Shown piece after piece: positions 1,716-46,744 of a DNA stretch of 64,000 nt. The first letter of the stretch is position 1. Each line of letters starts with the position of its first letter. Below the pieces are notes generated by a model. That model was not told the origin of the DNA, searched no databases, and was given only the letters and a program-made list of their open reading frames with translations. Location: assembly GCF_003918875.1 (NCBI RefSeq), contig NW_025767186.1, forward strand, positions 620,001 through 684,000, read 5' to 3'. Origin of the DNA: Haliotis rubra (Eukaryota). A program made the position numbers and the translations under genes.

Positions 1716-1934
1716 CTTCAACTGAGGGTCGCTTTTCACATACTCTGCCTTGCTTCGTCAAACACTTCAGCCCCATGTATCTCCCGTGTACCGAGGACAT
1801 AGCCAGACAACGTTCTTCTTTACTGGACTTCTTGGGGGAAACGTACGGATTCACGGGCATCTTGCTCAGCCACATCCAGCTGCCGGGGTCCACAAACCTA
1901 CTGCCCCCGATGTAGTAATCAGTGGATCGGTAAT
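1716..1934 (-). CDS. Exon: C-type lectin-like domain, second half ([25 protein letters not shown]...[32 protein letters not shown])
   Basis: TTGCAG acceptor at 1935. YIGG (WIGL-like), WxW, CxxM and C...CEK pattern. 3' end is either a GC donor (AAG|GCGAGT, intron from 1715) or read-through to the stop at 1615. Confidence 0.75.
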
Positions 1935-4900
1935 CTGCAAAGTGGGAATAATATTACAACAAAGTCCAAAATGGAAACAGTGGTGGCTTAATCGAAAACA
2001 ATGAACAATATCCAAGCAATGGAAGACGCGCTTTTAAGTCTGCAGTTTTAAGCGGTTCCTCATAGTTCCTCGGCCACTGATTCGCGCACGAGTAACAGCT
2101 TACTTGTTGAGGAGTACTGTTTGTGTATATATTTTTTTAACTATATAACTATATATATTTTACCACCATTGACCATATACGTACTTTCAAGGCCCTGTTC
2201 AACTGGTTATCTGGTTCCTCATTACAATACATCGTACATGGGCTTTCAAGTATAGCGCTCTGTACAACTTTATATACTGTCTGGTTTTCACTAAATTTTC
2301 GCACCTTCTTTGCTCTGTACAGCTTCATGGACCGCCTGTTGTTTCTTTGTCGTGTTGAGTTCAGCCAGAACTCCATCTGGTGTGGCGGCACACGCTTTCA
2401 CGGCCTCATACCATGATGTTTGCCTTGTCTCCAACTTGAAACAGAAGTCTTCTTCTAAAAGGTAGAAATATCCTTCGTCCACAGGGCAGTGCCATGGCAG
2501 CTTTTTAGGGGCTGTGAACACACAGAAATATTCAACACTTGATCACACGCAGACACACTGGACAAATAAATGTCCATTCTTAAAAAGATCATGTTAATTT
2601 GACTTGGTCACAGACCTATCAGCTATAACTGTGTGGTTAAGAAAACAGATTTTGTCCTACATGCATAACTGTAACTATATATGTTTGCTGTTTCACGCCA
2701 CACTCTAGTCTGGTCCAGAAAATCCACTGATACATCAGCGCAGTTGCGATTCTATGCCATGCATCAGCCGAGATCTCCAGAGTCACAATCCAGATAACTG
2801 TATCTATAAGCACCACGTTGTTATCAAAATATACAGTCAAGATGTATGAATAAGGTTTTCCCTTGAGTAGGACATACAAAATTAAAATTAACTGTTCCCA
2901 CATAACCAACTTGTTTTGTTCTGAGATTTCCAAAAGTAAAGAGAACCCTTCGAGTGTTTGACAATCCACTGAACTGAACTTGGTGGTAGACGTCTCTGAG
3001 TCACAACAATTTATCTGTCTTTGTGTGCATTATTGTGGAACTTTAAATCCAGGAGACATAATACATACTGATTCATAGGTGGCGCTGCACGTCGGTGACG
3101 CCATCGTAAATTGTGCTCTCGTCATTTTGCTTGTTTTTGTGTGTTTTAATGCCGCATAAGTGCTCATTTTGAACATAAAGACTAACGAAGTATGTCTGAC
3201 AAGATATTGCTGAGAACTGTCTGTGTGGTTTCAACACTTCTGTTGATTTTTGACCACTTCAGTGGTGTATGTTAACCATGGACAGTCATGGAGGTCAACA
3301 ATGGCGGACCAAGCCAGACGCTAATACTCTCTTATGAACGGGCAGAACTCCTGAAACTCCGGAATTACACTGATATCAGCTCACTAAGACTGGATATACC
3401 ACCGGAATGTGACACTGGAAATTCACAGAGAACGCGGAAAAGAGGTAAGAGGGGTGGAGTGAGACGCCGGGTTAGGGCTAGACAGCACAGACCCCCTCTA
3501 CCTACACTAGTATCGCTAACATACGCACTCTACGGAAACAATTTACGGAGCGTGAAGCATGTGTAACGTATCTACATCGATATAAAGACAGCTGCCTTCT
3601 TTGCTTCTCGGAAACATGGCTAACGGACAGTATTGATAGTGCAAGTCTTTGCCTCGATGGATTTGGTACCCCGATACGGCTGGACAGAGATGAAGTGGCA
3701 ACCGGTAAATCTAGTGGAGGCGGCGTATGCATGTATGTCAATTCTAAATGGTGCCCTAATTATGTTGTTCGAGATACAGTGTGTACACCCGATATCGAAC
3801 TCTTAACTGTGTCTTTCAGACCGTTCTATCTACCAAGGGAATTCGGGCAAGTGTTTATAACTGTTGTGTAAATTCCACCTGATGGAAATGATAAACGTGC
3901 TGCGGATGTTTCATGTGATTCTGTTAATAAACTGGACATGCTATCGGCGGATGCTCCCAAATTCATCCTTGGTGATTTTAATAGTCATCACTACCACACC
4001 TGTATCAGTATGTGAACTGTAAAACAAGAGGCGAGAAGACAATTGAACTTTGCTATTGGACAATCAAGAACGCCTATAAATCATTTTGCAAGCCACCTAT
4101 CGGAACTTCTGACCATAACGCAGTTTACTCAATCCCAGCTTACAAACAGAAACTTAAAACTGAGAAAACAGTGACAAAATCAGTGAAAGTCTATGCTAAA
4201 GAATCCATTGATGAGTTAAAAGCGTGCTTTGATGGTACAGCTTGGGACCTATTCGAGCAGGACTCCGATAGTGTTGACGAATTGTGTGAAGTTGTGACCT
4301 CTTACATAAACTTTAGCGTGGACTCCATCGTACATAATAAAACAATCAAGATCTTCCCGAACAACAAACCATGGGTGACAAAGGAGTTGAAAGCCCTACT
4401 TAGTGACAAGAAACGTGCATTGTGTTCTGGGGACAAGGTGAGAGTTAAATCAGCACAGAAGGACATATTACACTGTTCTCAGGAGTGTAAGCTCAAGTAC
4501 AAAGAAAGGATTGAATCAAAATTTCGGGAAAATAATCTTCGGGATGGATGGAATTGTGTTAAAAATATTCTTGGAACCAATCGGAAACAAAAGGAGATTA
4601 ACGTGAGTGACAGTCTAAAGTTTGCTGATGAATTGAACATTTTCTATTCTCGTTTTAATGAACATGACTTTTCAGAGGAAATGAAATCATCTTTTGGGAA
4701 ACCTTTCATTCTGCGAAACTCCAGTAATCTCCACTGATGACGTCAAAGAGTCGTTTCGAAGATTAAACTGTCGCAAGAGTGCGGGCCCCGATAATATCAC
4801 TTGTGCTATTCTCAAGGAGTGCCGTCATCAGTTAAGTGGTGTCTTTCAACAACTTTCCCAAACTACCCTGCTATACAATCATATACCCACTATGTGGGAA

Positions 4901-34900: not shown

Positions 34901-37900
34901 CATGTTATAATATACTGCGGGTTAACGGTAACCCTGGTGAGGTAAACTAGTATCTGCCGTAAGATGTCTTTTGTTGTTGTAACGGTTGGGGTGTTGAATG
35001 GGGGAGTTGAGAATATAGAATGTTTCTTGTTTGAATTTGTACAAAGGATGAGAGCTGTTTTTATTACAGAATGGTTTTCCGGCGTAGAAACTTCTTCAAA
35101 AGTATGTACATTTAGGCGTTTTAAATAATATTTGAACCAGAACGATATTTAAATGTTGTAAAGATACAGAGGTATATAATATTATTAGCAAGTTTAAGGT
35201 GTGGAGTTTTACAGTTAGAAGTAGAAACCGGGAGGGCTAACGGTATTATCAGGGAGGAAAGATCTTGTCAACTTTGTAAAAACGGTAAAATAGAAGGTGA
35301 AATGCTCTTTATGTTAGAATGTAAATCTTTTAATAATATTAAACCGAAATACATACCAGAAACATTTCTAAAATTACCAGTAAGACATAATTTTATATCA
35401 CTAATGGCCTCTAATAATGATGGATTATTGGTCAACGCTTGGAAATCTGCACATTCTTTATAAATTTTTAATTTCATCGACTGCTTGACATGGAAATTTA
35501 AGAATTTTCCCAGCAATCAGTTGTAAATGTCTCCTTAACGAGCATCAACCAACCAGAGGGCTTGCTTCGACCACCACCACCTCCCACCACCCCGTTTTGT
35601 GCGGATATATCATCATCCATTTGTGTCAAGATCGTTTAGTTGAGAGTCAAAAGTGGATTCCAATCGACTTGCAGAAATAACAATAAATAATTGGTAGGTG
35701 TCATGAGTGGTGCTCGATAGGCCAATCATCCATAATTATGTTTAATCGATTGCATGCGATGGTAGCGTAGCGATCGGCAAAGCGGGCGGGTGGGGTGCAC
35801 CCAAGTGTCCGGCCTTGTCATGATGTATTGTACTGTGAAGTATTTCGAGTCGGGGGTCATCTCAAATTTTTATATATTCTTTTTAAATCTTTAATCCTCG
35901 CAAAGATACGAGGGACTGTGCTATACCATAGGTAACTAAACTAGTCGTGGCTTACCTTTGTTACATAATCCACACGACATTTTGCAACCATTTCCCACAG
36001 ATCGAGAACAATACTTTTCTTTCTTGATAAGTTCCGAACAGAGTGTCCAGGGCAAGTTGTCACTACAGGTAGCGTCTGAAATCAGGAATAACACAAATGC
36101 TGACACATGTCTACAAGATGTGGTGTGTTGTGCATGGCTTGGTTGTCTTGTTGTGTTGTGGTGTAGCGTGGTGTGACATGTTTTGTGTTGTGGTGCAGTG
36201 TAGTATGACATAGTGTTGTGTGCCATATTGTGTATCTATACCCCTCTACATGTGGTTGTAGTCACTTTCAGCTTGATAACGATGTAAGAATCTACATCGA
36301 AACGTCGCTCTATGCAATAAATAAGAAGTTGTCATCCATAAAGTTGTATGTTTCATTTCTGGCATAGTGTCGTGTGTTGTGGTACAGTATGGAGTTGCAT
36401 GGTGTGATATCGTGTGTGGTTTTGCAGCCTTATTGAGTGTTGTGTTGTATGCTCTGGTGCAGTGTGGCGTGGTGTTGTATATCCAGTTGAAGCTATTGGT
36501 ATGGTTGGGTTGAAGCTATTGGTATGGTTGGGTTGAAGCTATTGGTATATTCAGTTGAAGCTATTGGTATATTCAGTTGAAGCTATTGGTATATTCAGTT
36601 GAAGCTATTGGTATATTCAGTTTATAAACATAACCGAAATATTGCATAAATTTTGTCAATTGAATCAGTTGTAAATTTCAGCTATGTTACACAATGATTG
36701 CGCCACACACAGGTCGAAGAAAAATGTTCCATCCTCAGCTTTGATTCATTGATGACAACACATTTGACGTTGTATGTGACATTTGGCATTTATCATACGC
36801 TGATATTTACTCACGAATCGTCAAATTGCCAACAGACGTTAATGATTATCGTCGATATACTTGGCACTTCTTTGATAGGCGTTGTGGTTTTGTGGGACGT
36901 TGAAATTGACGTGAAGCCACTGTTAACCTGAGCCACTGAGACTTCGTGACAATCTGTCGGTGTCTGAACGAACCCACTCCATATGTTGATACTTACGACA
37001 GACTCCACAAGTCAGTTTACACTGATTGTTGGCGTTTATAGGATCACAGTAACTGCGATTGTCCTTGATGATGTCTGCACACTCCTTCAGGTCATCCTTG
37101 CAGGTGACAGGCTCAGCGGACGTGTCTGAATGTGTTTCTACAAACAAACTCATACATTACCGCAGTCTCATTTATCCAGCTTTCATGATGTTGATACAAA
37201 CGACATACATTATCGTAATCTGAATGTGTTTCTGCAAACAAACTCATATCACCAGAACTGAACTTTATTCACTCAAGCTGCAAACTGAGGCACATAAGTA
37301 ATATTTACATTGCTACAACATAGACGGTATATACAGACGGTATGATAGGTGCAATGTACATCGAGCAGGTTACACATCAAGTTATTGAAATTATTTTTTA
37401 AATAAAGCCATAATTAGTTTACAAAAAATTGAAAGTATTCTTAAAGTTCCTAGCTTATTGGTGTTAAATAGGATATTCATTTTATACATATTTGGTCTAA
37501 TATAATAATACTTCTGAATACATTTTTCTCTTTCTATTTCTAATTTGGGACATATAAATAAATAATGAATTCGTCACCAATATCATTTAGGTTAATTTAG
37601 TTAATCGGCTGCTTAAAATAGATGCGAAAAGTTTTCCAAAACAGCTTAGTAGTGTTATTGGTAGTTTCAGGGGTTTTAGGATCGCCTTTATTTTTATAAA
37701 TTGGTTTGATGATACAAGTTAGCCACTTATCTGGGAAGATACCAGTGTCAAGTACAATGTTAAAAGGTTTACATAAATATCATAATATATCAATCTTAGT
37801 ATTCATTTACAGCATAATCAAAATCAATTCCAGGGGCTTTATTATTTTAAGATTTTTAACACATGATATTATTTCATCATTAGTTTCTTTCAGAGTTAAG

Positions 37901-40900
37901 TATAGTACTATTCCCAGTGTCGACATGAGGAAGGTTATCATCATAATTTAAAGGTGGCTCTTCATTTTGCGATTTAAAAAAGTATAACAATAGAATCAAT
38001 TTGTGGGTAATGTTCTGAGACCGTTTCTGCTTTACATTTTTGTAGTATTTTCCAGAAGGAATGTAGATCATTATTCCGAGGTTGTGATAGTGTTACCTGA
38101 ATGGATTTAGTATGTTTATTAGAAAACTTTACAAGACATTTTTTGTAATGTTTACTGGCATTTTGCAATCGAGATTTATTCTGAGATAATTTACAATTTT
38201 GGGATATCCTTTTCGCTTCAAAGTATTTTCCCAGTGAAAGTTTGCATTGTTTGCCAAACCAAGGTTGATTGGTACGCTTTTTTAAGGATTGTCAACGCGA
38301 TTTATTTTTGCACTTAAAACCAAAAACCTTACCTGCTGTAGAGACAAGCACATTGCTTATGGCATCATTAACATGAGTGATGGAGTGGGTCATCAGAACC
38401 CTCATTAAGAACATTGACAATAGATTGTATAACTAAATCTGATTTACCAACAGCTTCAACGTACTCACTCGCACGTGCTTAGTTCCACCTCCTGATCTCG
38501 GGAGTTTCATTACGTACAATGGGAATGGTATTTTTATTTACAACAAAAGGCTTTGTATAAAAGGATACAGAAACTGGTGACTGAATATCAGAAAACAATT
38601 GTTCAAACTCGTGCACTTTAAAACCAGCGACAGTCTGACAAATAACTGCGCCTGCTATGGCGTAATCAAGCACGCTTGCACCTTTACATGTAACACTACC
38701 TATCCCTTTATCCTCTCCAATCCGACAATTAAGAATATACAAATTGTTATTTTTAAAAAAATCAAGGAGTTTATAACTATGTGAATTTACTTAACATTGT
38801 CTTCATTACATCTATGGATTGGAGTACAGTATGATTGTAGTTTATCGACATCTTTCAGAAAATCACAATTCTAATGAAAGCAGCCTCGTTTTTCCAGCCT
38901 TCATGATGACACAAACAAACATGCATTATGACAACATCTTTTATCCACCTTTCATGTTGCTTAGACAAACAGACACACATTATCGTAATGTCCTTTATTT
39001 AGCTTTCATCGTGATGGCTATTGGTTGCTAGAAAATGAGAAGAAAACCCATATCCAAAACTTCGCTTATGCACCTTTCACAGTACTTACATAATCTAAGC
39101 CTCGTTTATTCAGCGCTTCAAATGTTACAACAAACAGACTTTATCATAAACACATTCTTCCCACATTTATGATGCTTGGACAAACAGATACAAAATACCA
39201 TCCACCGTCAGCATACTTGCTCTGTGTTATACAGATGACGTCACACGATGCTTTTGCTAATCACAGATGACATCATACAATGCCTGTACATGGTCTTGCA
39301 AAGTCAAACACATCCCTACAAGCACACCTATGCACACAATTGCCTTCAATGCAATAACCTATCACGACAATATGGCCTACAGACATTTTGAAAGTGTTCA
39401 GCTGTGTCTACAGACATTGAAGGAAGGCACTGACTACTACTATAGATTTCACAGGAAATGATTGATAACGGGATACTTACCACAAAGGCCACAAGACATT
39501 TTACACTGATTGTTTGTGTTTGTTGAGTTACAGTAACTTCCATTAGACGTAATGAGATCCATACATTCGTCCGGTCCCACCTCGTCACTACACGGGGCAG
39601 AGGTACTCTCTCCACCTGAAGATAATTCAACAAAAACACAACTGTCAAGAAGACATCGAGACTACATCGGAACTTCCAGGACTACGAAACACTGACTCTG
39701 TGATTTGTGCAGCTATTCGTACGTAACACTGGGACAAAAACAGGAATAAACATATATGCAACATGAAGAGAGACAGAAACATTACACCTTGGCATACACA
39801 CAAACAGTGTTTGGTTTGTCACAAGTATCGCCTTGACAGAAATGCAACCTTGACACACATGTAACTAGGACCTGGATAGACAAACAATACAAAACAGACA
39901 TAATTAAAACACAGGGGACAACACATACACAACACTTTCATACGAACCGTTTCCCATACACAGAAAGTAACAGCTGAACAGACACACAAGATAACACATA
40001 CATACACGAAGACCATCTTGACAGACACAAGTACCTACACCTGGACAGAAACAGGTAACATATGGTATGTTTGACTGGCGTCTCAGAAGGCGAGAAGGTC
40101 TATGAAAGATAAGACACTTTCTGGATGACAACGTCTTTGTTATATCATGATGCCACGTTTTGGTTGAGATTCTTATGCCGTTGTCAAAAAGGAGTGAAAT
40201 ATTACCGATGATGATTTGGAGATTTCCGACATAATGCGTATTTCACACACAGAGAAGTACTACAGCACAGAACAAACTTATATATATCATGCAGGAATTG
40301 GAGTGGAGGGGTAGCCCAGTGGTTAAAGCGTTGGCTCGTCACGCTGAAGCCCAGGGTTCGATACCCCACATGGGTACAATGTGGGAAGCCCATTTCTGGT
40401 GTCCCCCGCCGTGATATTGCTGGAATATTGCTAAAAACGGCGAAACATTTATTTCACACACTCACTCAAACAGGAATTAACCAAAACAACATGATGATAG
40501 GCACGAAGGGGATTTAAAACAACAGCAATAACAACAACAAAGGGTATTGGCAAGTAAGTACAGTAACTAGTGGAGGAAGTCAACTGTACGTGAGGCGGAA
40601 CAAAATATACACAGCTAATGAGATCTATAAGGAATGGTGGTTGCAGTGCTCTATTGTTTCAACAGTTGATTGTAAGCGGATGGGATGAGACATCATTAGT
40701 CTATGTTAATAGAGGACTTGTGTTGACGGATTTGAACTGCGTCAGTAGGTTTTCTTTAGTGACCTTTTTTACAGTATTTTTACTTTGTCCTGCTTGATGT
40801 TGTTGTTGGGGCAGTTGATGATGTGGTCTTGAATGGCTGATTTGGTGAAAGATATAAACTGTTCTTTGATACTGACATTTCTATCTACATCGAACTCGCC

Positions 40901-43900
40901 AGAGTGACAGCTGGTGAGGAGAGATTGATGGTTTGTCTGGTGAGGGTGGAGATGATAACAGTTTTTCTTCTCAAGGGGGTGTTTGGATTCAGAATGCACG
41001 TATTGGTTTCTATCGTGAACTGGACACGCGGGTGTTGTTGGTTGAGGTGTTGCAGGAGGATGGCTAGGTCATGTAGAATTGAGGGTCGTGTTGAGGGACG
41101 TTGAATTAACGTCAAGGTACTGTTACCTGAGAAGTCACAATGGACTTGGTGGTACATCGGTTAAGGTGTCGTCACTGTGTCTTAACGAACCCACTCCACA
41201 TTTTCGTTACTTTGATTACTCCATGGCAAAACAATGCCATTATATAAAATACGGTGATACTTACGACAGACTCCACAAGTCAGTTTACACTGATTGTTGG
41301 CGTTTATAGGATCACAGTAACTGCGATTGTCCTTGATGATGTCTGCACACTCCTTCAGGTCATCCTTGCAGGTGTCAGGCTCAGCGGACGTGTCTGAATG
41401 TGTTTCTACAAACAAACTCATATATTACCGCAGTCTCGTTTATCCAGCTTTAATGATGTTGATACAAACCAACATGCATTATGACAACCTCTTTTATCCA
41501 GCTTTCATGTTGCTCAGACAAACAGACATACATTATCGTAGTGTCTTTCATTTAGCTTTCATCGTGATGGCTATTGGTTGCTAGAAAATGAGAAGAAAGG
41601 CCTTTTCCCAAACCTCTTTGATCAACCTTTCACAGTACTTTACATAATCTAAGCCTCGTTTATTCAGCGTTTCCAAGGTTACAACAAAGAGACATAATCA
41701 TAAACTGATTCATCCCACATTCATTATGCTTGGACAAACAGATACAAAATACCATCCACCGTCAGCTTACTTGCTCTGTGTAATACAGCTGATGTCACAC
41801 AATGCTTTGTTATTTGTTAAACACAGATGACATCATACAATGCCTGTACATGGCCTTGCGAAATCAATCACATCCCTACAAGCACACCTATGCACACAAT
41901 TGCCTTCAATGCAATAACCTATCACGACAATATGGCCTACAGACATTTTGAAAGTGTTCAGCTGTGTCTACAGACATTGAAGGAAGGCACTGACTACTAC
42001 TATAGATTTCACAGGAAATGATTGATAACGGGATACTTACCACAAAGGCCACAAGACATTTTACACTGATTGTTTGTGTTTGTTGAGTTACAGTAACTTC
42101 CATTAGTCGTAATGAGATCCATACATTCGTCCGGTCCCACCTCGTCACTACACGGGGCAGAGGTACTCTCTCCACCTGAAGATTATTTTCAACTAAAACA
42201 CAATTATCAAGAAGACATCGAAACTACATCGGATACTTCCAGGACTACGAAACACTGACTCTGTGATTTGTGCAGCTATTCGTACGTAACACTGGGACAA
42301 AAACAGGAATAAAAATATATGCAACATGAAGAGAGTCAGAAACATTACACCTGGACATACACACAAGAAGGATTTGGTTTTTCTCACAAGTAACATACAC
42401 ACACACATAGACTCCTGGGCATACACACAAACAGTGTTTGGTTTGTCACAAGTATCGCCTTGACAGAAATGCAACCTTGACACACATGTAACTAGGACCT
42501 GGATAGACAAACAATACAAAACAGACATAATTAAAACACAGGGGACAACACATACACAACACTTTCATACGAACCGTTTCCCATACACAGAAAGTAACAT
42601 ACACAAGATAACACATACACAACACTTTCATAAAGTACACAGAAAGCTGAACAGACACACAAGATAACACATACACAACACTTTCATACGAACCGTTTCC
42701 CATCAGAAAGTTGACAGACACACAAGATAACCATACACAACACACCTGTTTCCCATACACAGAAAGTAACAGCTGAACAGACACACAAGTACAAAGTGGT
42801 TTATGTTTGACTGGCGTTTCTACACAGAAAGTAAAGCTGAACAGAGAAGGTCGTTTCCCATGAAAAGATACAGACACAAGATAACACATACATCACGAAG
42901 ACCATCTTGATAACAGGTAAAAAATGGTATGTTTTTGAGAAGGCGAGAAGGTCTATGAAAGATAAGACATGATGACAACGTCTTTGTTATATCATGATGC
43001 CACGTTTTGGTTCAGATTCTTATGCCGTTGTCAAAAAGGAGTGAAATATTACCGATGATGATTTGGAGATTTCCGACATAATGCGTATTTCACACACAGA
43101 GAAGTACTACAGCACAGAACAAACTTATATATATCATGCAGGAATTGGAGCGGTGGGGTAGCCCAGTGGTTAAAGCGTTGCCTCGTCACGCCGAAGACCC
43201 GGGTTCGATTCCCCACATGGGTACAATGTGGGAAGCCCATTTCTGGTGTCCCCCGCCGTGATATTGCTGGAATATTGCTAAAAACGGCGAAAAACTTATT
43301 TCACTCACTCACTCAAACAGGAATTAACCAAAACAACATGATGATAGGCACGAAGGGGATTTAAAACAACAACAACAACAACAGCAATAACAACAACAAC
43401 AACAACAACAAAGGGTATTGGCAAGTAAGTGCAGTAACTGGTGGAGGAAGTCAACTGTACGGGAGGCGGAACAAAATATACACAGCTAATGAGATCTATA
43501 AGGAATGGTGGTTGCAGTGCTCTATTGTTTTAACAGTTGATTGTAAGCGGATGGGATGAGACATCATTAGTCTATGTTACTAGCGGACTTGTGTTGACGG
43601 ATTTGAACTGCGTCAGTAGGTTTTCTTAAGTGATCTTTTTACAGTATTTTCACTTTGTCCTACTTGATTTTGTTGTTGGGGCAGTTGATGATGTGGTCTG
43701 GTATGGCTGATTTGGTGAAGTCAGTCAGTCAGTCAGTGATTTGGTGAAAGATATCAACTGTTCTTTTATACTGACATTTCTATCTACATCGAACTCGCCA
43801 GATGGTTTGTCTGGTGAGGGTGGAGATGATAACAGTTTTTCTTCTCAAGGGGTGTTTGGATTCAAAATGCACGTATTGGTTTTGTATGGTGAACTGGACA

Positions 43901-46322
43901 CGCGGGTGTTGTTGGTTGAGGTGTTGCAGGAGGATGGCTAGGTCATGTAGAATTGAGGGTCGTGTTGAGGGACGTTGAATTAACGTCAAGGTACTGTTAC
44001 CTGAGAAGTCACAACGGACTTGGTGGTACATCGGTTATGGTGTCGTCACTGTGTCTTAACGAACCCACTCCACATTTTCGTTACTATGATTACTCCATGG
44101 CAAAACAATGCCATTATCTAAACATATGTTGATACTTACGACAGACTCCACAAGTCAGTTTACACTGATTGTTGGCGTTTATAGGATCACAGTAACTGCG
44201 ATTGTCCTTGATGATGTCTGCACAGTCCTTCAGGTCATCCTTGCAGGTGTCAGGCTCAGCGGACGTGTCTGAATGTGTTTCTACAAACAAACTCATATAT
44301 TACCGCAGTCTCGTTTATCCAGCTTTAATGATGTTGATACAAACCAACATGCAGTATGACAACCTCTTTTAATCCAGCTTTCATATTGCTCAGACAAACA
44401 GACATACATTATCGTAATGTCCTTCATTTAGCTTTCATCGTGATGGCTATTGGTTACTAGAAAATGAGAAGAAAACCCGTATCCAAAACTTCACCCATCC
44501 ACCTTTCACAGTACGTTACATAATCTAAGCCTCGTTTATTCAGCGCTTCCAAGGTTACAACAAACAGACATAATCATAAACTGATTCATCCCACATTTAT
44601 GATGCTTGGACAAACAGATACCATCCACCGTCAGCATACTTGCTCTGTGTAATACAGCTGATGTCACACAATGCTTTGTTATTTGTTAAACACGGATGAC
44701 GTCTTACAATGCCTTTACATGGCCTTGCGAAATCAATCACATCCCTACAAGCACACCTATGCACACAATTGCCTTCAATGCAATAACCTATCACGACAAT
44801 ATGGCTTACAGACATATTGAACGTGTTCAGCTGTGTCTACAGACATTGAAGGAAGGCACTGGCTACTACTATAGATTTCACAGGAAATGATTGATAACGG
44901 GATACTTACCACAAAGGCCACAAGACATTTTACACTGATTGTTTGTGTTTGTTGAGTTACAGTAACTTCCATTAGTCGTAATGAGATCCATACATTCGTC
45001 CGGACCCACCTCGTCACTACACGGGACAGAGGTACTCTCTCCACCTGAAGATAATTCAACAACAACACAACTGTCAAGAAGACATCGAGACTACATCGGA
45101 ACTTCCAGGACTACGAAACACTGACTCTGTGATTTGTGCAGCTGTTTGCAACTATCCCAGGGACAGTCACTGGGCTTTGATACAGTTATTACCTCTGGAG
45201 AGTCAAAATAAATAACAGACAAAAACACAGTTGTCAAGAAGACATCGAGACTACATCGGAACTTCCTGGACTACGCAATACTGACTCTGTGATTTGTGCA
45301 GCTGTTTGTACCTAACGCAGGGAAAATCACTGGACTAGATACATTTATAACCTCTGGAGAGACAAAACAAATAACAGATCTGACTAAGGGATGAGTAACA
45401 CCATGGTGGTGGTGGTGGGTGATTGGTGGTAGTGGTGGGTGATGGTAGTGTTGGTGGTGGGTAATGGTGGTGGTGGTGATGTGGGTGGTGGTGGTGTTGG
45501 TGGTGGGTAATGGTGGTGGTGGTGATGTGGGTGGTGGTGGTGTTGAAGGTCGGTCGGTGTTTCTACAAACAAACTCATATATTACCGCAGTCTCGTTTAT
45601 CCAGCTTTAATGATGTTGATACAAACCAACATGCAGTATGACAACCTCTTTTAATCCAGCTTTCATATTGCTCAGACAAACAGACATACATTATCGTAAT
45701 GTCCTTCATTTAGCTTTCATCGTGATGGCTATTGGTTACTAGAAAATGAGAAGAAAACCCGTATCCAAAACTTCACCCATCCACCTTTCACAGTACGTTA
45801 CATAATCTAAGCCTCGTTTATTCAGCGCTTCCAAGGTTACAACAAACAGACATAATCATAAACTGATTCATCACATTTATGATGCTTGGACAAACAGATA
45901 CCATCCACCGTCAGCATACTTGCTCTGTGTAATACAGCTGATGTCACACAATGCTTTGTTATTTGTTAAACACGGATGACGTCTTACAATGCCTTTACAT
46001 GGCCTTGCGGAAATCATCACATCCCTACAAGCACCCTATGCACAAATTTGCCTTCAATGCAATAACCTATCACGACAATATGGCACAGACATATTGAACG
46101 TGTTCAACTGTGTCTACAGACATTGAAGGAAGGCACTGGCTACTACTATAGATTTCACAGGAAATGATTGATAACAGGATACTTACCACAAAGGCCACAA
46201 GACATTTTACACTGATTGTTTGTGTTTGTTGAGTTACAGTAACTTCCATTAGTCGTAATGAGATCCATACATTCGTCCGGACCCACCAACGTCACTACAC
46301 GGGACAGAGGTACTCTCTCCAC
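1716..46322 (-). CDS. Multi-exon gene (partial) for a mosaic secreted/surface protein: ShKT x7-8 / N-glycosylated Thr-rich stalk / (F-type lectin-CCP) x4 / C-type lectin-like domain
   Basis: 23 exons reconstructed manually. Each is bounded by AG and GT (two by candidate GC) and has a length divisible by 3 in phase 1; the exception is the 136-bp noisy copy at 46187-46322. Junction codons give no stops. About 4.5 kb of coding sequence. 5' end and 3' end not identified. Confidence 0.85.
2305..2511 (-). CDS. Exon: C-type lectin-like domain, first half ([68 protein letters not shown])
   Basis: CACAG acceptor, AAG|GTGCGA donor, 207 bp. CP...CFK...SWYEA...C...G.LA is the CTLD N-terminal pattern. 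Confidence 0.88.
3078..6358 (+). mobile_element. Near full-length Rex1/Babar-type LINE (APE + RT), inactivated by frameshifts and stops
   Basis: APE motifs FSETWL, RLDR..GGGVCMY, GDFN, SDHN. RT motifs [38 protein letters not shown]-terminal LPSGRR...[18 protein letters not shown] followed by a (TATCT)n tail. Confidence 0.88.
6650..7760 (+). mobile_element. 5'-truncated non-LTR retrotransposon with restriction-like endonuclease (R4/Dong/NeSL-like)
   Basis: [24 protein letters not shown] knuckle [37 protein letters not shown], spread across frameshifted ORFs 6797-7840. Confidence 0.82.
8690..10900 (-). mobile_element. Heavily deleted Gypsy LTR-retrotransposon relic (Gmr1-like gag/SCAN-like and integrase remnants)
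   Basis: gag-like [45 protein letters not shown]. Integrase-region LAGHLG..K..WP and [10 protein letters not shown]. Confidence 0.75.
10070..10846. repeat. Minisatellite, 35-bp unit (ctttcccctcaatacacttcctgg[g/a]cttcctggac), about 22 copies, inside Gypsy gag
   Basis: Tandem repeat seen directly. Confidence 0.97.
11240..11320 (-). mobile_element. Penelope-like pLTR relic with a degenerate hammerhead ribozyme
   Basis: Minus strand ATCATGA-A-GGAGC..GCTCT-GAAAC-GTC-G, then AATAAA..AGTTGTTATCCA. The tail resembles the copy at 36270. Confidence 0.6.
11705..13552. repeat. Minisatellite, 41-bp unit (cttacttgtaacggtcacagtgtgtgagatcatgtttctct), about 45 copies
   Basis: Tandem repeat seen directly. 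Confidence 0.97.
13625..13828 (-). CDS. Exon: CCP/Sushi domain 4 ([67 protein letters not shown])
   Basis: TTTTCCAG acceptor, 204 bp, 4 Cys plus G.W...P.C. The phase-1 donor is GC (AG|GCAAGT). This frame is absent from the ORF track. Confidence 0.85.
13975..18103. repeat. Minisatellite, 41-bp unit (ctctaccaatgccctcgtcactgaggaccatacacacaacg), about 100 copies, degenerate at the left end
   Basis: Tandem repeat seen directly; fills almost the whole FTL4b-CCP4 intron. Confidence 0.97.
18107..18340 (-). CDS. Exon: F-type lectin domain 4, second half ([10 protein letters not shown]...[46 protein letters not shown])
   Basis: AACAG acceptor, AAG|GTTAGT donor, 234 bp. GRYV and LSLCEV motifs. Confidence 0.9.
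18641..18868 (-). CDS. Exon: F-type lectin domain 4, first half ([15 protein letters not shown]...ASRANDG...[35 protein letters not shown])
   Basis: TTCCAG acceptor, T|GTAAGT donor, 228 bp. NLA..K.A..SS, A.DG, PWW.VDL and ITNR motifs. Confidence 0.92.
18930..19790. repeat. Minisatellite, 32-bp unit (gtagtgggtacagctgtgtgtgactgggacgt)
   Basis: Tandem repeat seen directly; fills the CCP3-FTL4a intron. Confidence 0.96.
19825..19992 (-). CDS. Exon: CCP/Sushi domain 3 ([55 protein letters not shown])
   Basis: TTTCAG acceptor, G|GTGAGT donor, 168 bp. 4-Cys/Trp CCP pattern. Confidence 0.9.
20400..20522. repeat. 42-bp unit x3
   Basis: gttaaactgacagaagagaagggtttaaatatatatacgtca repeated. Confidence 0.85.
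20548..20766 (-). CDS. Exon: F-type lectin domain 3, second half (QGRFNIKVI...[46 protein letters not shown])
   Basis: TTTCAG acceptor, G|GTACGT donor, 219 bp. GR.V and L.LCEV motifs. Confidence 0.88.
21112..21330 (-). CDS. Exon: F-type lectin domain 3, first half ([28 protein letters not shown]...[34 protein letters not shown])
   Basis: CTCAG acceptor, T|GTGCGT donor, 219 bp. Divergent F-type motifs (VAL, SST, AVD, PWWRV.L). Confidence 0.85.
21617..21790. repeat. 39-bp unit x3-4
   Basis: ggtgagttt..tgtgctttagtcagtttcaaaaggttg repeated. Confidence 0.85.
22321..22540 (-). mobile_element. Mollusc-type SINE (core GCTTGTCGTAAGAGGCGACTAA, Meta/MESC-like), 5'-truncated, (ACTC)n tail
   Basis: Core motif recalled from molluscan SINEs, not searched. 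The 3' part GAATATTGCT..GGCG.AAA..CACTCACT is shared with the SINEs at 40.3 and 43.1 kb. Confidence 0.7.
22582..24871. repeat. Minisatellite, 27-bp unit (aacaatacacttgggtacagatgtac[a/t]), about 85 copies
   Basis: Tandem repeat seen directly, starting at the CCP2 donor. Confidence 0.97.
24872..25057 (-). CDS. Exon: CCP/Sushi domain 2 ([61 protein letters not shown])
   Basis: TATAG acceptor, G|GTAGGT donor, 186 bp. Confidence 0.9.
25306..25518 (-). CDS. Exon: F-type lectin domain 2, second half ([64 protein letters not shown])
   Basis: AACAG acceptor, AAG|GTACAC donor, 213 bp. LTLCEV motif. Absent from the ORF track. Confidence 0.88.
25655..25873 (-). CDS. Exon: F-type lectin domain 2, first half ([29 protein letters not shown]...[35 protein letters not shown])
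   Basis: CGTAG acceptor, T|GTGAGC donor, 219 bp. NLA..K.ASQSS, AVDG, W.VDLG and NR.DCC motifs. Confidence 0.92.
26127..26315 (-). CDS. Exon: CCP/Sushi domain 1 ([62 protein letters not shown])
   Basis: TACAG acceptor, G|GTTAGT donor, 189 bp. Confidence 0.9.
26905..26996. mobile_element. Small palindromic MITE / hairpin
   Basis: The arms gttcctcaaagcaatcgtagcactaaga and tcgtagcgctacgatcgcttcgggaac are imperfect reverse complements. Confidence 0.65.
27085..27735. repeat. Minisatellite, 36-bp unit (cattgcttgctggaagcagtgccctcacaatggata), about 18 copies
   Basis: Tandem repeat seen directly, about 40 bp into the intron after FTL1b. Confidence 0.97.
27776..28012 (-). CDS. Exon: F-type lectin domain 1, second half ([12 protein letters not shown]...[46 protein letters not shown])
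   Basis: TTCAAG acceptor, CAG|GTACAT donor, 237 bp. GRYV and [10 protein letters not shown] motifs. Confidence 0.88.
30106..30312 (-). CDS. Exon: F-type lectin domain 1, first half ([68 protein letters not shown])
   Basis: CTGCAG acceptor, T|GTAAGC donor, 207 bp. Canonical NLALGK, ANDG, CSHT, PWWRVDL and NR.DCC motifs. Confidence 0.93.
30395..31477. mobile_element. Non-autonomous DNA transposon, Kolobok-type (TTAA TSD, 14-bp TIR AGGTCACATGCAAC)
   Basis: ttaa|AGGTCACATGCAAC at 30391-30408 and GTTGCATGTGACCT|ttaa at 31464-31481. Purine-purine termini favour Kolobok over piggyBac. Confidence 0.8.
31492..32037 (-). CDS. Exon: Thr/Asn/Ser-rich stalk with 10 copies of [10 protein letters not shown] (30-bp coding minisatellite, about 31665-31970)
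   Basis: TTCTGTAG acceptor, AAG|GTAAGC donor, 546 bp, phase 1-1. Open frame with non-repetitive S/T/P-rich flanks. Confidence 0.85.
32310..35500 (+). mobile_element. Degenerate APE-RT LINE (RTE-X/Daphne-like; clade uncertain)
   Basis: [60 protein letters not shown]. Many stops and frameshifts. Confidence 0.85.
32628..33142. repeat. Near-perfect 30-bp minisatellite (atgtaccaccttatcctactggtgtgactc) x17 inside the LINE
   Basis: Only two copies differ (C>G). Confidence 0.98.
35956..36075 (-). CDS. Exon: ShKT domain type C ([39 protein letters not shown])
   Basis: TTTCAG acceptor, AAG|GTAAGC donor, 120 bp. Six Cys, C.D start, CxxxCxxC end. Confidence 0.88.
36270..36309 (+). ncRNA. Minimal type-I hammerhead ribozyme (U3-A8 variant) in a Penelope-like solo pLTR
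   Basis: AGC-UUGAUAA-C-GAUGUA-agaauc-UACAUC-GAAAC-GUC|GCU. Stem I is AGC/GCU, stem II is 6 bp, stem III is palindromic ACGU. AATAAA at 36316. Confidence 0.72.
36484..36621. repeat. 22-bp unit x6 (gttgaagctattggtatattca)
   Basis: Tandem repeat seen directly. Confidence 0.9.
36997..37125 (-). CDS. Exon: ShKT domain type B, copy 1 ([42 protein letters not shown])
   Basis: TTCAG acceptor, GTAAGT donor, 129 bp, six-Cys ShK spacing. Confidence 0.88.
37253..38870 (-). mobile_element. Internally deleted LINE relic, present in only one copy of the ShK duplication unit
   Basis: [48 protein letters not shown], and an AATAAAGTTCAGTTC tail. Absent from the paralogous introns at 41394-42040 and 44269-44909. 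Confidence 0.8.
39481..39615 (-). CDS. Exon: ShKT domain type A, copy 1 ([44 protein letters not shown])
   Basis: CTTCAG acceptor, G|GTAAGT donor, 135 bp. The ORF track shows a different frame. Confidence 0.88.
40115..41070 (-). mobile_element. Penelope-like element relic (RT + GIY-YIG fragments + degenerate hammerhead at 40151-40189)
   Basis: [16 protein letters not shown] (PLE RT), [18 protein letters not shown] (GIY-YIG region), and TTGACAA-C-GGCATA-AGAATC-TCAACC-AAAAC-GTG followed by GTTGTCATCC. Confidence 0.75.
40300..40467 (+). mobile_element. tRNA-derived SINE with 8-bp TSD caggaatt
   Basis: A box TAGCCCAGTGG, B box GGTTCGATACC, (ACTC)n tail; caggaatt at 40292 and 40471. Confidence 0.88.
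41265..41393 (-). CDS. Exon: ShKT domain type B, copy 2 ([42 protein letters not shown])
   Basis: Same boundaries as copy 1, 129 bp. Confidence 0.87.
42041..42175 (-). CDS. Exon: ShKT domain type A, copy 2 ([28 protein letters not shown]...)
   Basis: 135 bp, AG/GT intact. Confidence 0.87.
42968..43950 (-). mobile_element. Duplicate of the Penelope-like relic (degenerate hammerhead at 42998-43036)
   Basis: Near-identical to 40115-41070. Confidence 0.75.
43147..43314 (+). mobile_element. tRNA-derived SINE (duplicate, same TSD)
   Basis: A box TAGCCCAGTGG, B box GGTTCGATTCC; caggaatt at 43139 and 43318. Confidence 0.88.
44140..44268 (-). CDS. Exon: ShKT domain type B, copy 3 ([26 protein letters not shown]...)
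   Basis: 129 bp, AG/GT intact. Confidence 0.87.
44910..45044 (-). CDS. Exon: ShKT domain type A, copy 3 ([28 protein letters not shown]...)
   Basis: 135 bp, AG/GT intact. Confidence 0.87.
45312..45353 (-). CDS. Candidate 42-bp linker micro-exon ([13 protein letters not shown])
   Basis: Strong TTTTGTCTCTCCAG acceptor and AG|GTACAA donor (GTAC donors occur elsewhere in this gene). Phase 1-1 and open. Confidence 0.35.
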
Positions 46323-46740
46323 CTGAAGATAATTCAACAACAACACAACTGTCAAGAAGACATCGAGACTACATCACCGGAACTTCCAGGACTACGAAAC
46401 ACTGACTCTGTGATTTGTGCAGCTGTTTGCAACTATCCGGTGATAGTGGTAAGGGACAGTCACTGGGCTTTGATACAGTTATTACCTCTGGAGAGTCAAA
46501 ATAAATAACAGACAAAACACAGTTGTCATCAAGAAGACATCGAGACTACATCCGGAACTTCCTGGACTATGGTGGAGTGCAATACTGACTCTGTGATTTG
46601 TGCAGCTGTTTGTACCTAACTGGGTGGTTGTGCTTGGTTGTGGTGTTGCAGGGAAAATCACTTTGGACTAGAATACATTTTATAACCTCTGGAGAGACAA
46701 AACAAATAACAGATCTGACTAGTGGTGGTAGGGGATGAAG
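45557..46740. repeat. Noisy duplicate of 44275-45400
   Basis: Same diagnostic variants as unit 3, plus scattered indels and GGT-type intrusions. Confidence 0.8.
46187..46322 (-). pseudogene. ShKT type A copy 4 with a +1 frameshift; possibly a redundant assembly copy of copy 3
   Basis: 136 bp (ccaccaacgtc vs ccacctcgtc). Shares copy-3 diagnostic bases; flanks carry many small indels. Confidence 0.55.
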
Positions 46741-46744
46741 TAAC

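What the first reader, a model, noticed from the sequence alone, without database searches (positions are those of the whole stretch)
1716..46322. Hidden 23-exon mosaic gene: ShKT array + N-glycan brush + (F-type lectin-CCP)x4 + C-type lectin
Seen: the ORF track shows only fragments, but splicing the minus strand gives one continuous frame of about 1,500 aa. It has 7-8 ShKT domains, a repeat stalk, four strictly alternating FTL/CCP pairs and a CTLD. Known: FTL+CCP+CTLD combinations exist (e.g. Drosophila furrowed/CG9095-type proteins), and ShKT domains occur on metalloproteases, tyrosinases, peroxidases and secreted mucus proteins. I do not know of a described protein combining a tandem ShK array with FTL-CCP repeats and a CTLD. 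Inference: a lineage-specific mucus, immune, adhesive or gamete-surface protein coupling multivalent glycan recognition to an ShK effector or interaction array.
Basis: partly seen in the sequence, partly recalled or inferred. Interest (0 to 1): 0.88.

Follow-up and report, generated by a model that had tools for sequence, protein, structure and literature searches.

The report
Abalone ShK-fucolectin-Sushi mosaic gene
A real abalone gene, with no matching predicted protein found for this genome, encodes a very large, probably secreted protein made of toxin-like ShK knots, a sugar-coated stalk, four fucose-lectin/Sushi pairs and probably a C-type lectin domain; the same layout (without the C-type lectin) is already predicted, unnamed, in two other abalone species, so it is a lineage-specific variant of mosaic lectins, not a new kind of thing.

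Summary
The exon chain is real. Twenty-two minus-strand exons (45044 to 1716) have AG acceptors and GT donors (two GC). Every one is a multiple of 3 and in phase 1-1. Spliced, they give 1480 codons without a stop. No start or signal-peptide exon lies in the window.

- **Domains:** 7 intact ShKT-like domains, a 182-aa stalk with 20 N-glycan sequons, four F-type lectin/Sushi pairs, and one CTLD.
- **Orthologues:** RefSeq "uncharacterized" 1455-aa models XP_071107976.1 (Haliotis cracherodii) and XP_048256753.1 (H. rufescens LOC124150393). Both show signal peptide, 6 ShKT, stalk and (FTL-CCP)x4, so ShK and FTL exons are one gene there. About 60% identity to the window model; dS about 0.55; dN/dS 0.16-0.6 per exon.
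- **CTLD:** both models stop after Sushi-4, and H. rufescens puts the CTLD in a second 851-aa model. A GC donor conserved in three species, the phase-1 CTLD acceptor, no poly(A) signal and a minisatellite-filled gap make one gene more likely (about 65%). Further ShK exons follow the CTLD in the relatives, so the gene probably runs off the window.
- **Binding residues:** only FTL domain 1 keeps the fucose-binding triad. The CTLD lacks EPN/WND, so "multivalent glycan recognition" is not supported.

Verdict: lineage-specific variant of mosaic F-type lectins. Function untested.

The parts
46187..46322 (-). A' : extra copy of the type-A ShKT exon, 136 nt, out of frame, first Cys lost (pseudo-exon or assembly error)
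   Evidence: identical to A1 except one substitution and a one-base length difference
44910..45044 (-). ShKT-like exon A1 (135 nt, phase 1-1)
44140..44280 (-). ShKT-like exon B1 (141 nt, phase 1-1)
   Evidence: (Pfam ShK E 0.088, full-length 1-37/37)
42041..42175 (-). ShKT-like exon A2
41265..41405 (-). ShKT-like exon B2
39481..39615 (-). ShKT-like exon A3
36997..37137 (-). ShKT-like exon B3
35956..36075 (-). ShKT-like exon C (79% aa identity to the last N-terminal ShKT of the H. cracherodii orthologue)
31492..32037 (-). stalk exon: 10-aa repeat ([10 protein letters not shown]-like) x about 10, 20 N-glycosylation sequons in 182 aa, 35% Ser+Thr
30106..30312 (-). F-type lectin domain 1, first exon (keeps His and Arg-x-Asp of the fucose motif)
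   Evidence: (PDB 3CQO E 3.7e-20, 1K12 E 7.7e-13)
27776..28012 (-). F-type lectin domain 1, second exon (supplies the last Arg of the triad)
26127..26315 (-). Sushi/CCP 1
   Evidence: (21.3 bits, cut-off 20.7)
25655..25873 (-). F-type lectin domain 2, first exon (His replaced by Thr)
25306..25518 (-). F-type lectin domain 2, second exon
24872..25057 (-). Sushi/CCP 2 (dN/dS about 1.08, the fastest exon)
21112..21330 (-). F-type lectin domain 3, first exon (His to Arg, Arg to Asp)
20548..20766 (-). F-type lectin domain 3, second exon
19825..19992 (-). Sushi/CCP 3
18641..18868 (-). F-type lectin domain 4, first exon (motif shifted, non-canonical)
18107..18340 (-). F-type lectin domain 4, second exon
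13625..13828 (-). Sushi/CCP 4; ends at AG|GCAAGT (GC donor) at the same place relative to the last Cys as the donors of CCP1-3; if unspliced, stop after 2 codons
   Evidence: (28.7 bits)
2305..2511 (-). C-type lectin-like domain, first exon; phase-1 acceptor, no in-frame ATG upstream
   Evidence: dN/dS 0.28
1716..1934 (-). C-type lectin-like domain, second exon; ends at a phase-1 donor position (GC here, GT in H. cracherodii), so more exons probably lie beyond the window's left edge
   Evidence: (24.1 bits, cut-off 22.6)
36980..46620 (-). tandem duplication zone: two-exon A+B units of 2.5-2.9 kb, 90-96% identical in introns, 98-99% in exons

Best explanation
The window holds the middle of one large, conserved abalone gene on the minus strand. 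It is the orthologue of RefSeq LOC124150393 (H. rufescens) and XP_071107976.1 (H. cracherodii). Every coding exon is a phase-1/phase-1 cassette that carries one domain or half a domain.

The product is a large extracellular mosaic. Secretion is inferred from the orthologues' signal peptide. In order, it has an N-terminal array of ShKT-like six-cysteine knots, a stalk carrying about 20 N-glycan sites, four F-type-lectin-fold domains each followed by a Sushi module, and then, most likely through a conserved GC-AG intron, a sugar-motif-less C-type lectin-like domain. Further ShK exons probably follow to the left of the window.

Shown here: the exon chain, the domains, orthology, purifying selection on every exon class, recent tandem gain of ShKT exons, and a different stalk repeat unit in each lineage.

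Inferred mechanism: a secreted scaffold or adhesin with essentially one canonical fucose site, on FTL domain 1. The other three FTL domains and the CTLD would keep the fold but bind other ligands or none. Sushi modules would act as spacers or protein-binding units. The ShKT arrays would act as disulfide-stabilised interaction or cross-linking modules, as in nematode mucins and limpet pedal-mucus proteins, not as channel blockers.
For: Exon chain: 22 exons, all multiples of 3, 1480 codons without a stop, with canonical splice sites.

Orthology: the 1455-aa RefSeq models have the same order of ShKT, stalk and (FTL-CCP)x4, about 60% identity over roughly 1360 residues. The loci are colinear, including a shared intronic minisatellite.

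Selection: dS about 0.55. dN/dS is 0.23 for ShKT, 0.38 for FTL, 0.43 for CCP and 0.40 for CTLD.

Domain calls. ShKT support comes from the six-Cys register; the three best full-length matches in a PDB profile search are ShKT-type peptides, namely OspTx2b, Hui1 and aurelin; the only two Foldseek PDB matches are ShKT peptides; and hhalign gives 90% probability, E 1.5e-6, against downstream ShK exons of the same locus, one of which passes Pfam ShK at 22.8 bits.

One gene including the CTLD:
- AG|GCAAG is conserved at the end of CCP4 in three species, at the position where CCP1-3 have GT donors.
- The CTLD exon 1 acceptor is conserved in phase 1, and the window has no upstream ATG.
- There is no AATAAA or ATTAAA after the CCP4 stop.
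- The CCP4-CTLD gap in H. cracherodii is about 1 kb, of which 858 nt is a 32-nt minisatellite.
- No signal-peptide exon candidate lies in the 11-kb gap here.

Binding residues. ShKT in gastropod mucus and the missing Lys-Tyr dyad: PMC7333891.
Against: There is no transcript evidence of any kind for this genome.

Both RefSeq orthologue models end after CCP4, and H. rufescens has a separate Lectin_C model. The conserved GCAAG could equally be the codons Gly-Lys of a true C-terminus.

The 5' end is missing. No start exon lies in 18 kb upstream. The most upstream ShKT copy is frameshifted. The upstream region is about 14 kb of GGT-rich simple repeat with two N runs, so this copy could be 5'-truncated.

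The ShKT assignment never reaches Pfam's threshold on the window's own domains. The AF2 model is mediocre (pLDDT 77) and the Foldseek E-values are about 10.

Function is inferred from domain content only. In H. cracherodii even FTL domain 1 lacks the last basic residue of the triad.
Confidence: 0.6

Rival explanations
1. Two adjacent genes. The ShKT-stalk-(FTL-CCP)x4 gene ends two codons after Sushi-4, as in the RefSeq models. The CTLD exons open a separate downstream gene (CTLD plus ShK array, 851 aa in H. rufescens).
For: Both RefSeq models stop after CCP4. H. rufescens has a second called gene with Lectin_C starting 125 nt downstream. A stop follows the CCP4 boundary within 2-4 codons in all three species. 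In H. cracherodii an in-frame Met with a hydrophobic stretch directly precedes CTLD exon 1.
Against: That Met is absent in the window, where a stop codon lies in frame upstream of the exon. The second model's ATG is inside a minisatellite unit and meets a stop after 5 codons. No poly(A) signal follows the first gene. There is no promoter-sized unique sequence in the 1-kb gap. The CTLD exon keeps a phase-1 acceptor that matches the phase-1 boundary of CCP4. A predictor that accepts only GT donors would produce exactly this split.
Confidence: 0.3
2. This genome's copy is a decaying or 5'-truncated pseudogene. The intact exons are a recent relic.
For: A' is frameshifted. No start exon or D-type ShKT exons lie in the window, although the orthologues have them within 7-8 kb upstream of their first type-A ShKT exon. 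About 14 kb of simple repeat with assembly gaps replaces that region. No predicted protein from this locus was found in the protein collection.
Against: 4.4 kb of coding sequence in 22 exons has no stop, no frameshift and intact splice sites, at a divergence of dS about 0.55 with dN/dS well below 1. The duplicated ShKT exons are better conserved (98-99%) than their introns (90-96%). The 5' exons may simply lie beyond 64 kb or in the N runs.
Confidence: 0.15
3. Gamete-recognition protein of the oyster-bindin kind: an F-lectin repeat protein on sperm or egg, evolving fast under sexual selection.
For: Mollusc F-lectin repeats serve as bindins (PMC5712786). Divergence is fast (about 60% identity between abalone lineages). 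Repeat number and unit turn over in both the ShKT array and the stalk, and one exon has dN/dS about 1.
Against: The mean dN/dS of 0.2-0.5 is purifying rather than positive. Oyster bindin is F-lectin repeats only, without Sushi, ShKT or CTLD. There are no expression data. The fucose triad is lost in three of four domains.
Confidence: 0.1

Closest known systems
RefSeq XP_048256753.1 (LOC124150393, Haliotis rufescens) and XP_071107976.1 (H. cracherodii), both 'uncharacterized protein', 1455 aa
   Same: Same exon order and phases. Signal peptide, ShKT array, N-glycan stalk and (FTL-Sushi)x4. Colinear loci. About 60% identity.
   Different: They have 6 ShKT domains (three of a type absent from the window, two of type A, one of type C), against 3 A + 3 B + 1 C plus a broken copy here. 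Their stalk repeat is 60 nt x12, against 30 nt x10 here. Their models stop before the CTLD.
Drosophila furrowed / CG9095 and insect 'SVEP1-like' proteins (CTLD + F-type lectin domain + Sushi repeats + TM)
   Same: They combine FTLD, CCP and a CTLD whose sugar-binding residues are missing. Some FTLDs have lost the basic triad (PMC5712786). Domain-level hits at E about 1e-19 to 1e-21.
   Different: Domain order and number differ: one FTLD and a run of CCPs rather than strict FTL/CCP alternation. They have a transmembrane anchor, no ShKT and no glycan stalk. Similarity covers only about 20% of the query.
Limpet pedal-mucus protein P-vulgata_14 (Patella vulgata; PMC7333891)
   Same: [quoted passage not shown] Its ShKT also lacks the Lys-Tyr dyad. 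This matches the CTLD-then-ShK order seen downstream in the abalone loci.
   Different: It carries an astacin protease, ApeC, CUB and Kringle domains, and has no F-type lectin domains and no ShKT array.
Toxocara canis mucins Tc-MUC-1 to 4 (ShKT/SXC domains flanking glycosylated Ser/Thr-rich cores), as cited in PMC7333891
   Same: ShKT domains are joined to a heavily glycosylated repeat region in a secreted, non-toxin protein.
   Different: Their core is an O-glycan mucin rather than an N-glycan sequon repeat. They have no lectin or Sushi domains. They are nematode proteins.
Oyster bindins and fish tandem fucolectins (AAA 1K12, MsaFBP32 3CQO)
   Same: FTL domain 1 aligns with 1K12 and 3CQO, including C-x-H, PWWRVDL and NRxDCC. 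FTLDs are repeated in one chain.
   Different: Those are FTLD-only proteins with the binding triad mostly retained. Here three of four domains have lost it and each is separated by a Sushi module.

Membership tests
F-type lectin domain (FTLD) | Sequence/profile match to the FTLD fold | tested here: met
   PF22633 hits on the first exon of all four domains (E 7e-13, 2.2e-7, 3.5e-5, 2.6e-7). FTL1 against PDB 3CQO E 3.7e-20 and 1K12 E 7.7e-13.
F-type lectin domain (FTLD) | Fucose-binding motif His ... Arg-x-Asp-x4-Arg/Lys (PMC5712786) | tested here: not met
   Met only in FTL domain 1 of the window (CSH ... NRQDCCCGR, with one extra loop residue). Domain 2 has His>Thr and last basic>His. Domain 3 has His>Arg and Arg>Asp. 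Domain 4 has a shifted register. The H. cracherodii domain 1 lacks the last basic residue.
F-type lectin domain (FTLD) | Cation-binding motif h-h-D-G-x | tested here: inconclusive
   ANDGN (domain 1), AVDGE (domain 2), AVDAM (domain 3, Gly lost), ANDGV (domain 4). Domains 1 and 4 have Asn where a small hydrophobic residue is expected.
F-type lectin domain (FTLD) | Fucose binding | not testable with these tools
   Needs recombinant domains and a glycan array.
Sushi / CCP | Pfam PF00084 above the gathering score; four Cys and the conserved Trp in one exon | tested here: met
   21.3, 21.6, 21.1 and 28.7 bits against a cut-off of 20.7. The C...C...C..W...C pattern is visible.
C-type lectin-like domain | Pfam PF00059 match and cysteine framework | tested here: met
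   Exon 2 scores 24.1 bits (cut-off 22.6) on profile positions 33-107. Exon 1 covers profile positions 2-36 (E 0.025). The two halves abut in the profile. The H. cracherodii exon gives the same result.
C-type lectin (Ca-dependent carbohydrate-recognition domain) | EPN/QPD and WND motifs of Ca site 2 | tested here: not met
   Neither motif is in the spliced domain. The closest solved sequences, all weak, are NK-type CTLDs CLEC9A and CD94 (E 0.45-0.7).
ShKT / SXC domain | Six cysteines in the ShK register ending C-x3-C-x2-C, with Asp after Cys1 | tested here: met
   Invariant C, D, C, C, C, C, C across 13 domains from two species. Seven intact copies in the window.
ShKT / SXC domain | Pfam PF01549 above the gathering score (20.9 bits) | tested here: not met
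   Best window domain scores 13.8 bits, E 0.088. Five of 13 aligned domains match at E 0.035 or weaker. A downstream exon of the same locus in H. rufescens does pass (22.8 bits).
ShKT / SXC domain | Profile or fold similarity to known ShKT peptides | tested here: inconclusive
   The three best full-length PDB profile hits are OspTx2b, Hui1 and aurelin, at E 0.15-9.8. The only two Foldseek hits are ShKT peptides, with TM 0.43-0.51 and E about 10, on a pLDDT-77 model. hhalign to the Pfam-passing downstream ShK exons gives 90% probability, E 1.5e-6.
ShK-type K+ channel toxin | Lys-Tyr functional dyad between Cys3 and Cys4 (as cited in PMC7333891) | tested here: not met
   No Lys-Tyr pair lies in that loop in any A, B or C domain.
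furrowed / CG9095-type receptor | CTLD + FTLD + run of CCPs + transmembrane anchor | tested here: not met
   No TM segment lies in the 1480-aa model (by eye). Domain order and number differ. Similarity is domain-level only. The true C-terminus lies outside the window, so an anchor cannot be excluded.
Single transcription unit including the CTLD | Spliceable, phase-compatible junction conserved across species | tested here: met
   AG|GCAAG in three species with a phase-1 acceptor.
Single transcription unit including the CTLD | Transcript spanning the junction | not testable with these tools
   No RNA data are reachable. The public models split here.

The most novel reading that the evidence does not exclude
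The locus is one gene of more than 2,000 aa that public annotation splits at a GC-AG intron. Its layout would be ShKT array, N-glycan stalk, (FTL-Sushi)x4, CTLD and a second ShK array. Every exon is a symmetric phase-1 cassette, and the ShKT cassettes have been duplicated recently. The gene could therefore produce many isoforms by cassette skipping, which would make it a diversified extracellular recognition molecule peculiar to abalone.
Probability: 0.15. Interest if true: 0.65.

Novelty: new variant of a known kind. Interest (0 to 1): 0.42.

Why it matters
The finding adds a domain combination to the mosaic F-type lectins that is not described in the papers I could search: an ShKT array and an N-glycan stalk ahead of strictly alternating lectin/Sushi pairs. 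As far as these searches reach, the combination occurs only in abalone.

It shows exon-cassette evolution at work. ShKT exon pairs have been gained recently, the stalk repeat unit has been replaced, and the sugar-binding residues have been lost in three of four lectin domains.

It also flags a probable annotation error in two RefSeq genomes, where a gene appears to be split at a GC donor. The gene seems to have no predicted protein in this genome. For abalone biology it is a candidate secreted adhesion or recognition protein, but nothing here shows which.

Tried and rejected
- **Start exon in the window.** ATG/hydrophobic/donor scans of 45-64 kb, tblastn with the orthologue's N-terminus and sensitive blastn with its first exon found nothing credible. 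A candidate at 46529 has the wrong phase.
- **Coding reading of the P/T/H-rich 'ORFs' at 46.5-54.6 and 58-64 kb.** Rejected. They are open in all three frames because the strand lacks G, and they are degenerate (GGT)n. They have no counterpart in the H. cracherodii locus.
- **Comparative loci through the search for related loci.** Not used, because its genome collection is bacterial and archaeal only.
- **This genome's own protein model, or transcript fragments bridging CCP4 to the CTLD.** Three protein searches covering 310-2546 aa returned only the American abalone models.
- **Independent first exon for the CTLD in the 11-kb gap.** No credible candidate.
- **Further exons right of 1716 to the window edge, or conserved with the H. 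cracherodii tail.** None found.
- **H. laevigata shell-matrix 'fucolectin/Sushi' protein (PMC6003135).** A different mosaic with chitin-binding and galectin domains.
- **Spliced protein in the remote tools.** The halves were tested separately.

Full report
**What is in the sequence**

The window is metazoan DNA. Its introns are full of minisatellites. Stop-free minus-strand segments between 46.4 kb and 1.6 kb carry recognisable domain pieces.

Reading each piece with its flanks gives an AG acceptor and a GT donor for every exon. The two exceptions have GC donors.

Locating the boundaries by script gives 23 exons. Twenty-two of them (45044 down to 1716) have lengths divisible by 3 and all sit in phase 1-1. 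Spliced, they give 4443 nt, or 1480 codons, without a stop. If lengths were unconstrained, 22 of 22 divisible by 3 has a probability of about 3e-11.

The remaining exon is the most upstream one (46322-46187). It is 136 nt long and matches its neighbour A1 except for one substitution and a one-base length difference. That shifts the frame and removes the first cysteine. It is either a pseudo-exon or an assembly error.

**Domains**

- **F-type lectin.** Pfam finds the N-terminal half of the F-type lectin (F5_F8_type_C_2) fold on four exons. The first of these also matches the solved fucolectins MsaFBP32 (3CQO, E 3.7e-20) and eel agglutinin (1K12, E 7.7e-13), with C-x-H, PWWRVDL and NRxDCC aligned.
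- **Sushi.** Four exons score above the Pfam gathering threshold.
- **CTLD.** Lectin_C is split over two exons that cover abutting parts of the profile.
- **Stalk.** One 546-nt exon holds a 30-nt in-frame repeat of about 10 copies. It has 20 N-x-S/T sequons in 182 residues and 35% Ser+Thr.
- **ShKT-like domains.** There are seven intact single-exon, six-cysteine domains of three types (A x3, B x3, C x1).

The ShKT domains do not reach Pfam's ShK threshold (best 13.8 bits against 20.9). The assignment rests on four observations:
- the invariant C-D-C-C-C-C-C register;
- a profile search of PDB sequences whose three best full-length matches are ShKT-type peptides (OspTx2b, Hui1, aurelin; E 0.15-9.8);
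- an AlphaFold model (pLDDT 77) whose only two Foldseek matches in the PDB are ShKT peptides (TM 0.43-0.51, E about 10);
- a profile-profile match (90% probability, E 1.5e-6) to ShK exons lying downstream in the same locus of related species, one of which passes Pfam ShK (22.8 bits).

The Lys-Tyr pair used by channel-blocking ShK toxins (as cited in PMC7333891) is absent from the Cys3-Cys4 loop of every copy.

**Relatives**

An exhaustive HMMER search with the first FTL exon returned 4384 FTL proteins at E up to 0.001, of which the best 150 were listed. One of these, P0013 (1455 aa), has the same build: a signal-peptide-like N-terminus, six ShKT-like domains, a 20-aa N-glycan repeat stalk and (FTL-Sushi)x4.

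P0013 is RefSeq XP_071107976.1, 'uncharacterized protein' of Haliotis cracherodii. Its 90% cluster also holds XP_048256753.1, LOC124150393 of H. rufescens.

The window model is about 60% identical to both over roughly 1360 residues. The loci are colinear exon for exon, and the minisatellite after the second exon of FTL domain 4 is alignable between them.

Three word-indexed searches covering lengths of 310-2546 aa found no other close relative and no protein marked as the window's own. An HMM of the ShKT-like domains hits only P0013 among 237 collected FTL proteins.

Earlier notes of this scan name the genome as blacklip abalone. I did not verify the species beyond these Haliotis orthologues.

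**Selection and turnover**

Codon alignments against H. cracherodii give dS of about 0.55. Per-exon dN/dS runs from 0.16 to 0.60, except Sushi-2 at 1.08. Pooled values are ShKT 0.23, FTL 0.38, CCP 0.43 and CTLD 0.40. All exon classes, the CTLD included, are constrained coding sequence.

The ShKT array differs between lineages. The American species have three 'D' copies, two A copies and one C copy. The window has A', then three A+B pairs, then C.

The A+B pairs lie in 2.5-2.9-kb tandem units that are 90-96% identical in introns and 98-99% identical in exons.

The stalk repeat unit is 30 nt here and 60 nt in H. cracherodii, around a shared NQTS.N.TT core.

**Binding residues**

I checked the motif given in PMC5712786 against an alignment of the eight FTL domains from the two species. 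Only domain 1 of the window keeps the pattern His ... Arg-x-Asp-x4-Arg. Domains 2-4 have replaced one or more of these residues in both species. In H. cracherodii, domain 1 also lacks the last basic residue.

The CTLD has neither EPN/QPD nor WND. Its nearest solved sequences, all weak, are NK-type CTLDs.

The protein is therefore not obviously a multivalent sugar binder. At most one canonical fucose site is visible.

**Where the gene ends**

*5' end.* No start exon lies in the window. Upstream of A' there are about 14 kb of degenerate (GGT)n with two N runs. This stretch is open in all minus frames for compositional reasons only, and H. cracherodii has nothing like it.

*3' end.* Both RefSeq models stop 2-4 codons after Sushi-4. 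H. rufescens has a second 851-aa Lectin_C model starting 125 nt later. I think this split is an artefact, for six reasons:
- The boundary after Sushi-4 reads AG|GCAAG in all three species. It sits where Sushi-1 to Sushi-3 have GT donors.
- CTLD exon 1 keeps a phase-1 acceptor.
- In the window, a stop and no ATG lies upstream of that exon.
- No AATAAA or ATTAAA follows the supposed last exon.
- The 1-kb gap in H. cracherodii is almost entirely a 32-nt minisatellite. The second model's ATG lies in the first unit of the corresponding array in H. rufescens and meets a stop five codons later.
- No signal-peptide candidate lies in the 11-kb gap here. That gap is inflated by a reverse-transcriptase fragment and by minisatellites.

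A predictor limited to GT donors would produce exactly this split. The alternative, a true terminal exon in which GCAAG encodes Gly-Lys, is not excluded. I put one gene at about 65%.

The CTLD's second exon itself ends at a phase-1 donor position (GT in H. cracherodii, GC here). Similarity between the species stops there. In the relatives, ShK exons in phase 1 follow 1 kb and 6 kb further on. The gene therefore most likely continues past the window's left edge.

**Reading**

This is a conserved, fast-evolving abalone gene for a large extracellular mosaic protein. Its domain content is closest to three groups:
- the mosaic F-type lectins (furrowed/CG9095, sea-urchin SpCRL; PMC5712786);
- gastropod mucus mosaics that join Sushi, CTLD and ShKT (limpet P-vulgata_14; PMC7333891);
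- ShKT-flanked glycoproteins of nematodes.

I propose a secreted scaffold or adhesin with one fucose site, degenerate lectin folds, Sushi spacers and ShKT interaction modules. This is inference from anatomy, and no expression or binding data exist.

The architecture is not described in the papers I could search. It does already exist as unnamed RefSeq predictions in two congeners, so I rate it a new variant of a known kind, of moderate interest.

Noticed in passing
window 14160-18103, 18949-19797, 22677-24861, 27086-27737, 11707-13552; L001 39550-42297, 30626-31628, 36842-38050, 45409-46266: Nearly every intron of this gene has its own minisatellite (units of 20-41 nt, up to 96 copies) that begins 0-150 nt after the 5' splice site. 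This holds in both abalone lineages. The array after the second exon of FTL domain 4 starts 3 nt after the donor in both species and is still alignable between them (68-70% identity).
   Followed up: partly
window 46400-54600 and 58000-64000: About 14 kb of degenerate (GGT)n-type simple sequence with GC skew about 0.95 and two N runs (47110-47336, 50546-50728). On the minus strand it is open in all three frames and translates to Pro/Thr/His-rich pseudo-proteins. It is absent from the orthologous H. cracherodii locus.
   Followed up: partly
window 4694-5461 (+), with neighbouring ORF 4012-4737 (+): A reverse-transcriptase fragment (RVT_1, E 1e-24) of a retroelement lies inside the 11-kb interval between Sushi-4 and the CTLD. 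That interval is only about 1 kb in H. cracherodii.
   Followed up: partly
L002 43570-53445 (H. rufescens); L001 51633-51776; L002 48116-48259 and 52921-53025: Downstream of the CTLD the American abalone loci carry further phase-1 ShK exons. One passes Pfam ShK and has a Lys-Tyr pair before Cys4. RefSeq places them with the CTLD in a separate 851-aa model whose start codon lies in a minisatellite.
   Followed up: partly
window 32628-33142: A 30-nt tandem repeat (17 copies, 99% identical) sits in the intron just upstream of the stalk exon. It has the same period as the coding 30-nt stalk repeat but a different sequence. It gives spurious plus-strand tblastn hits to the orthologue's stalk.
   Followed up: no
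window 24872-25057 (Sushi-2): This is the only exon with dN/dS near 1 (1.08; 47% amino-acid identity to H. cracherodii), while its neighbours are at 0.16-0.5.
   Followed up: no
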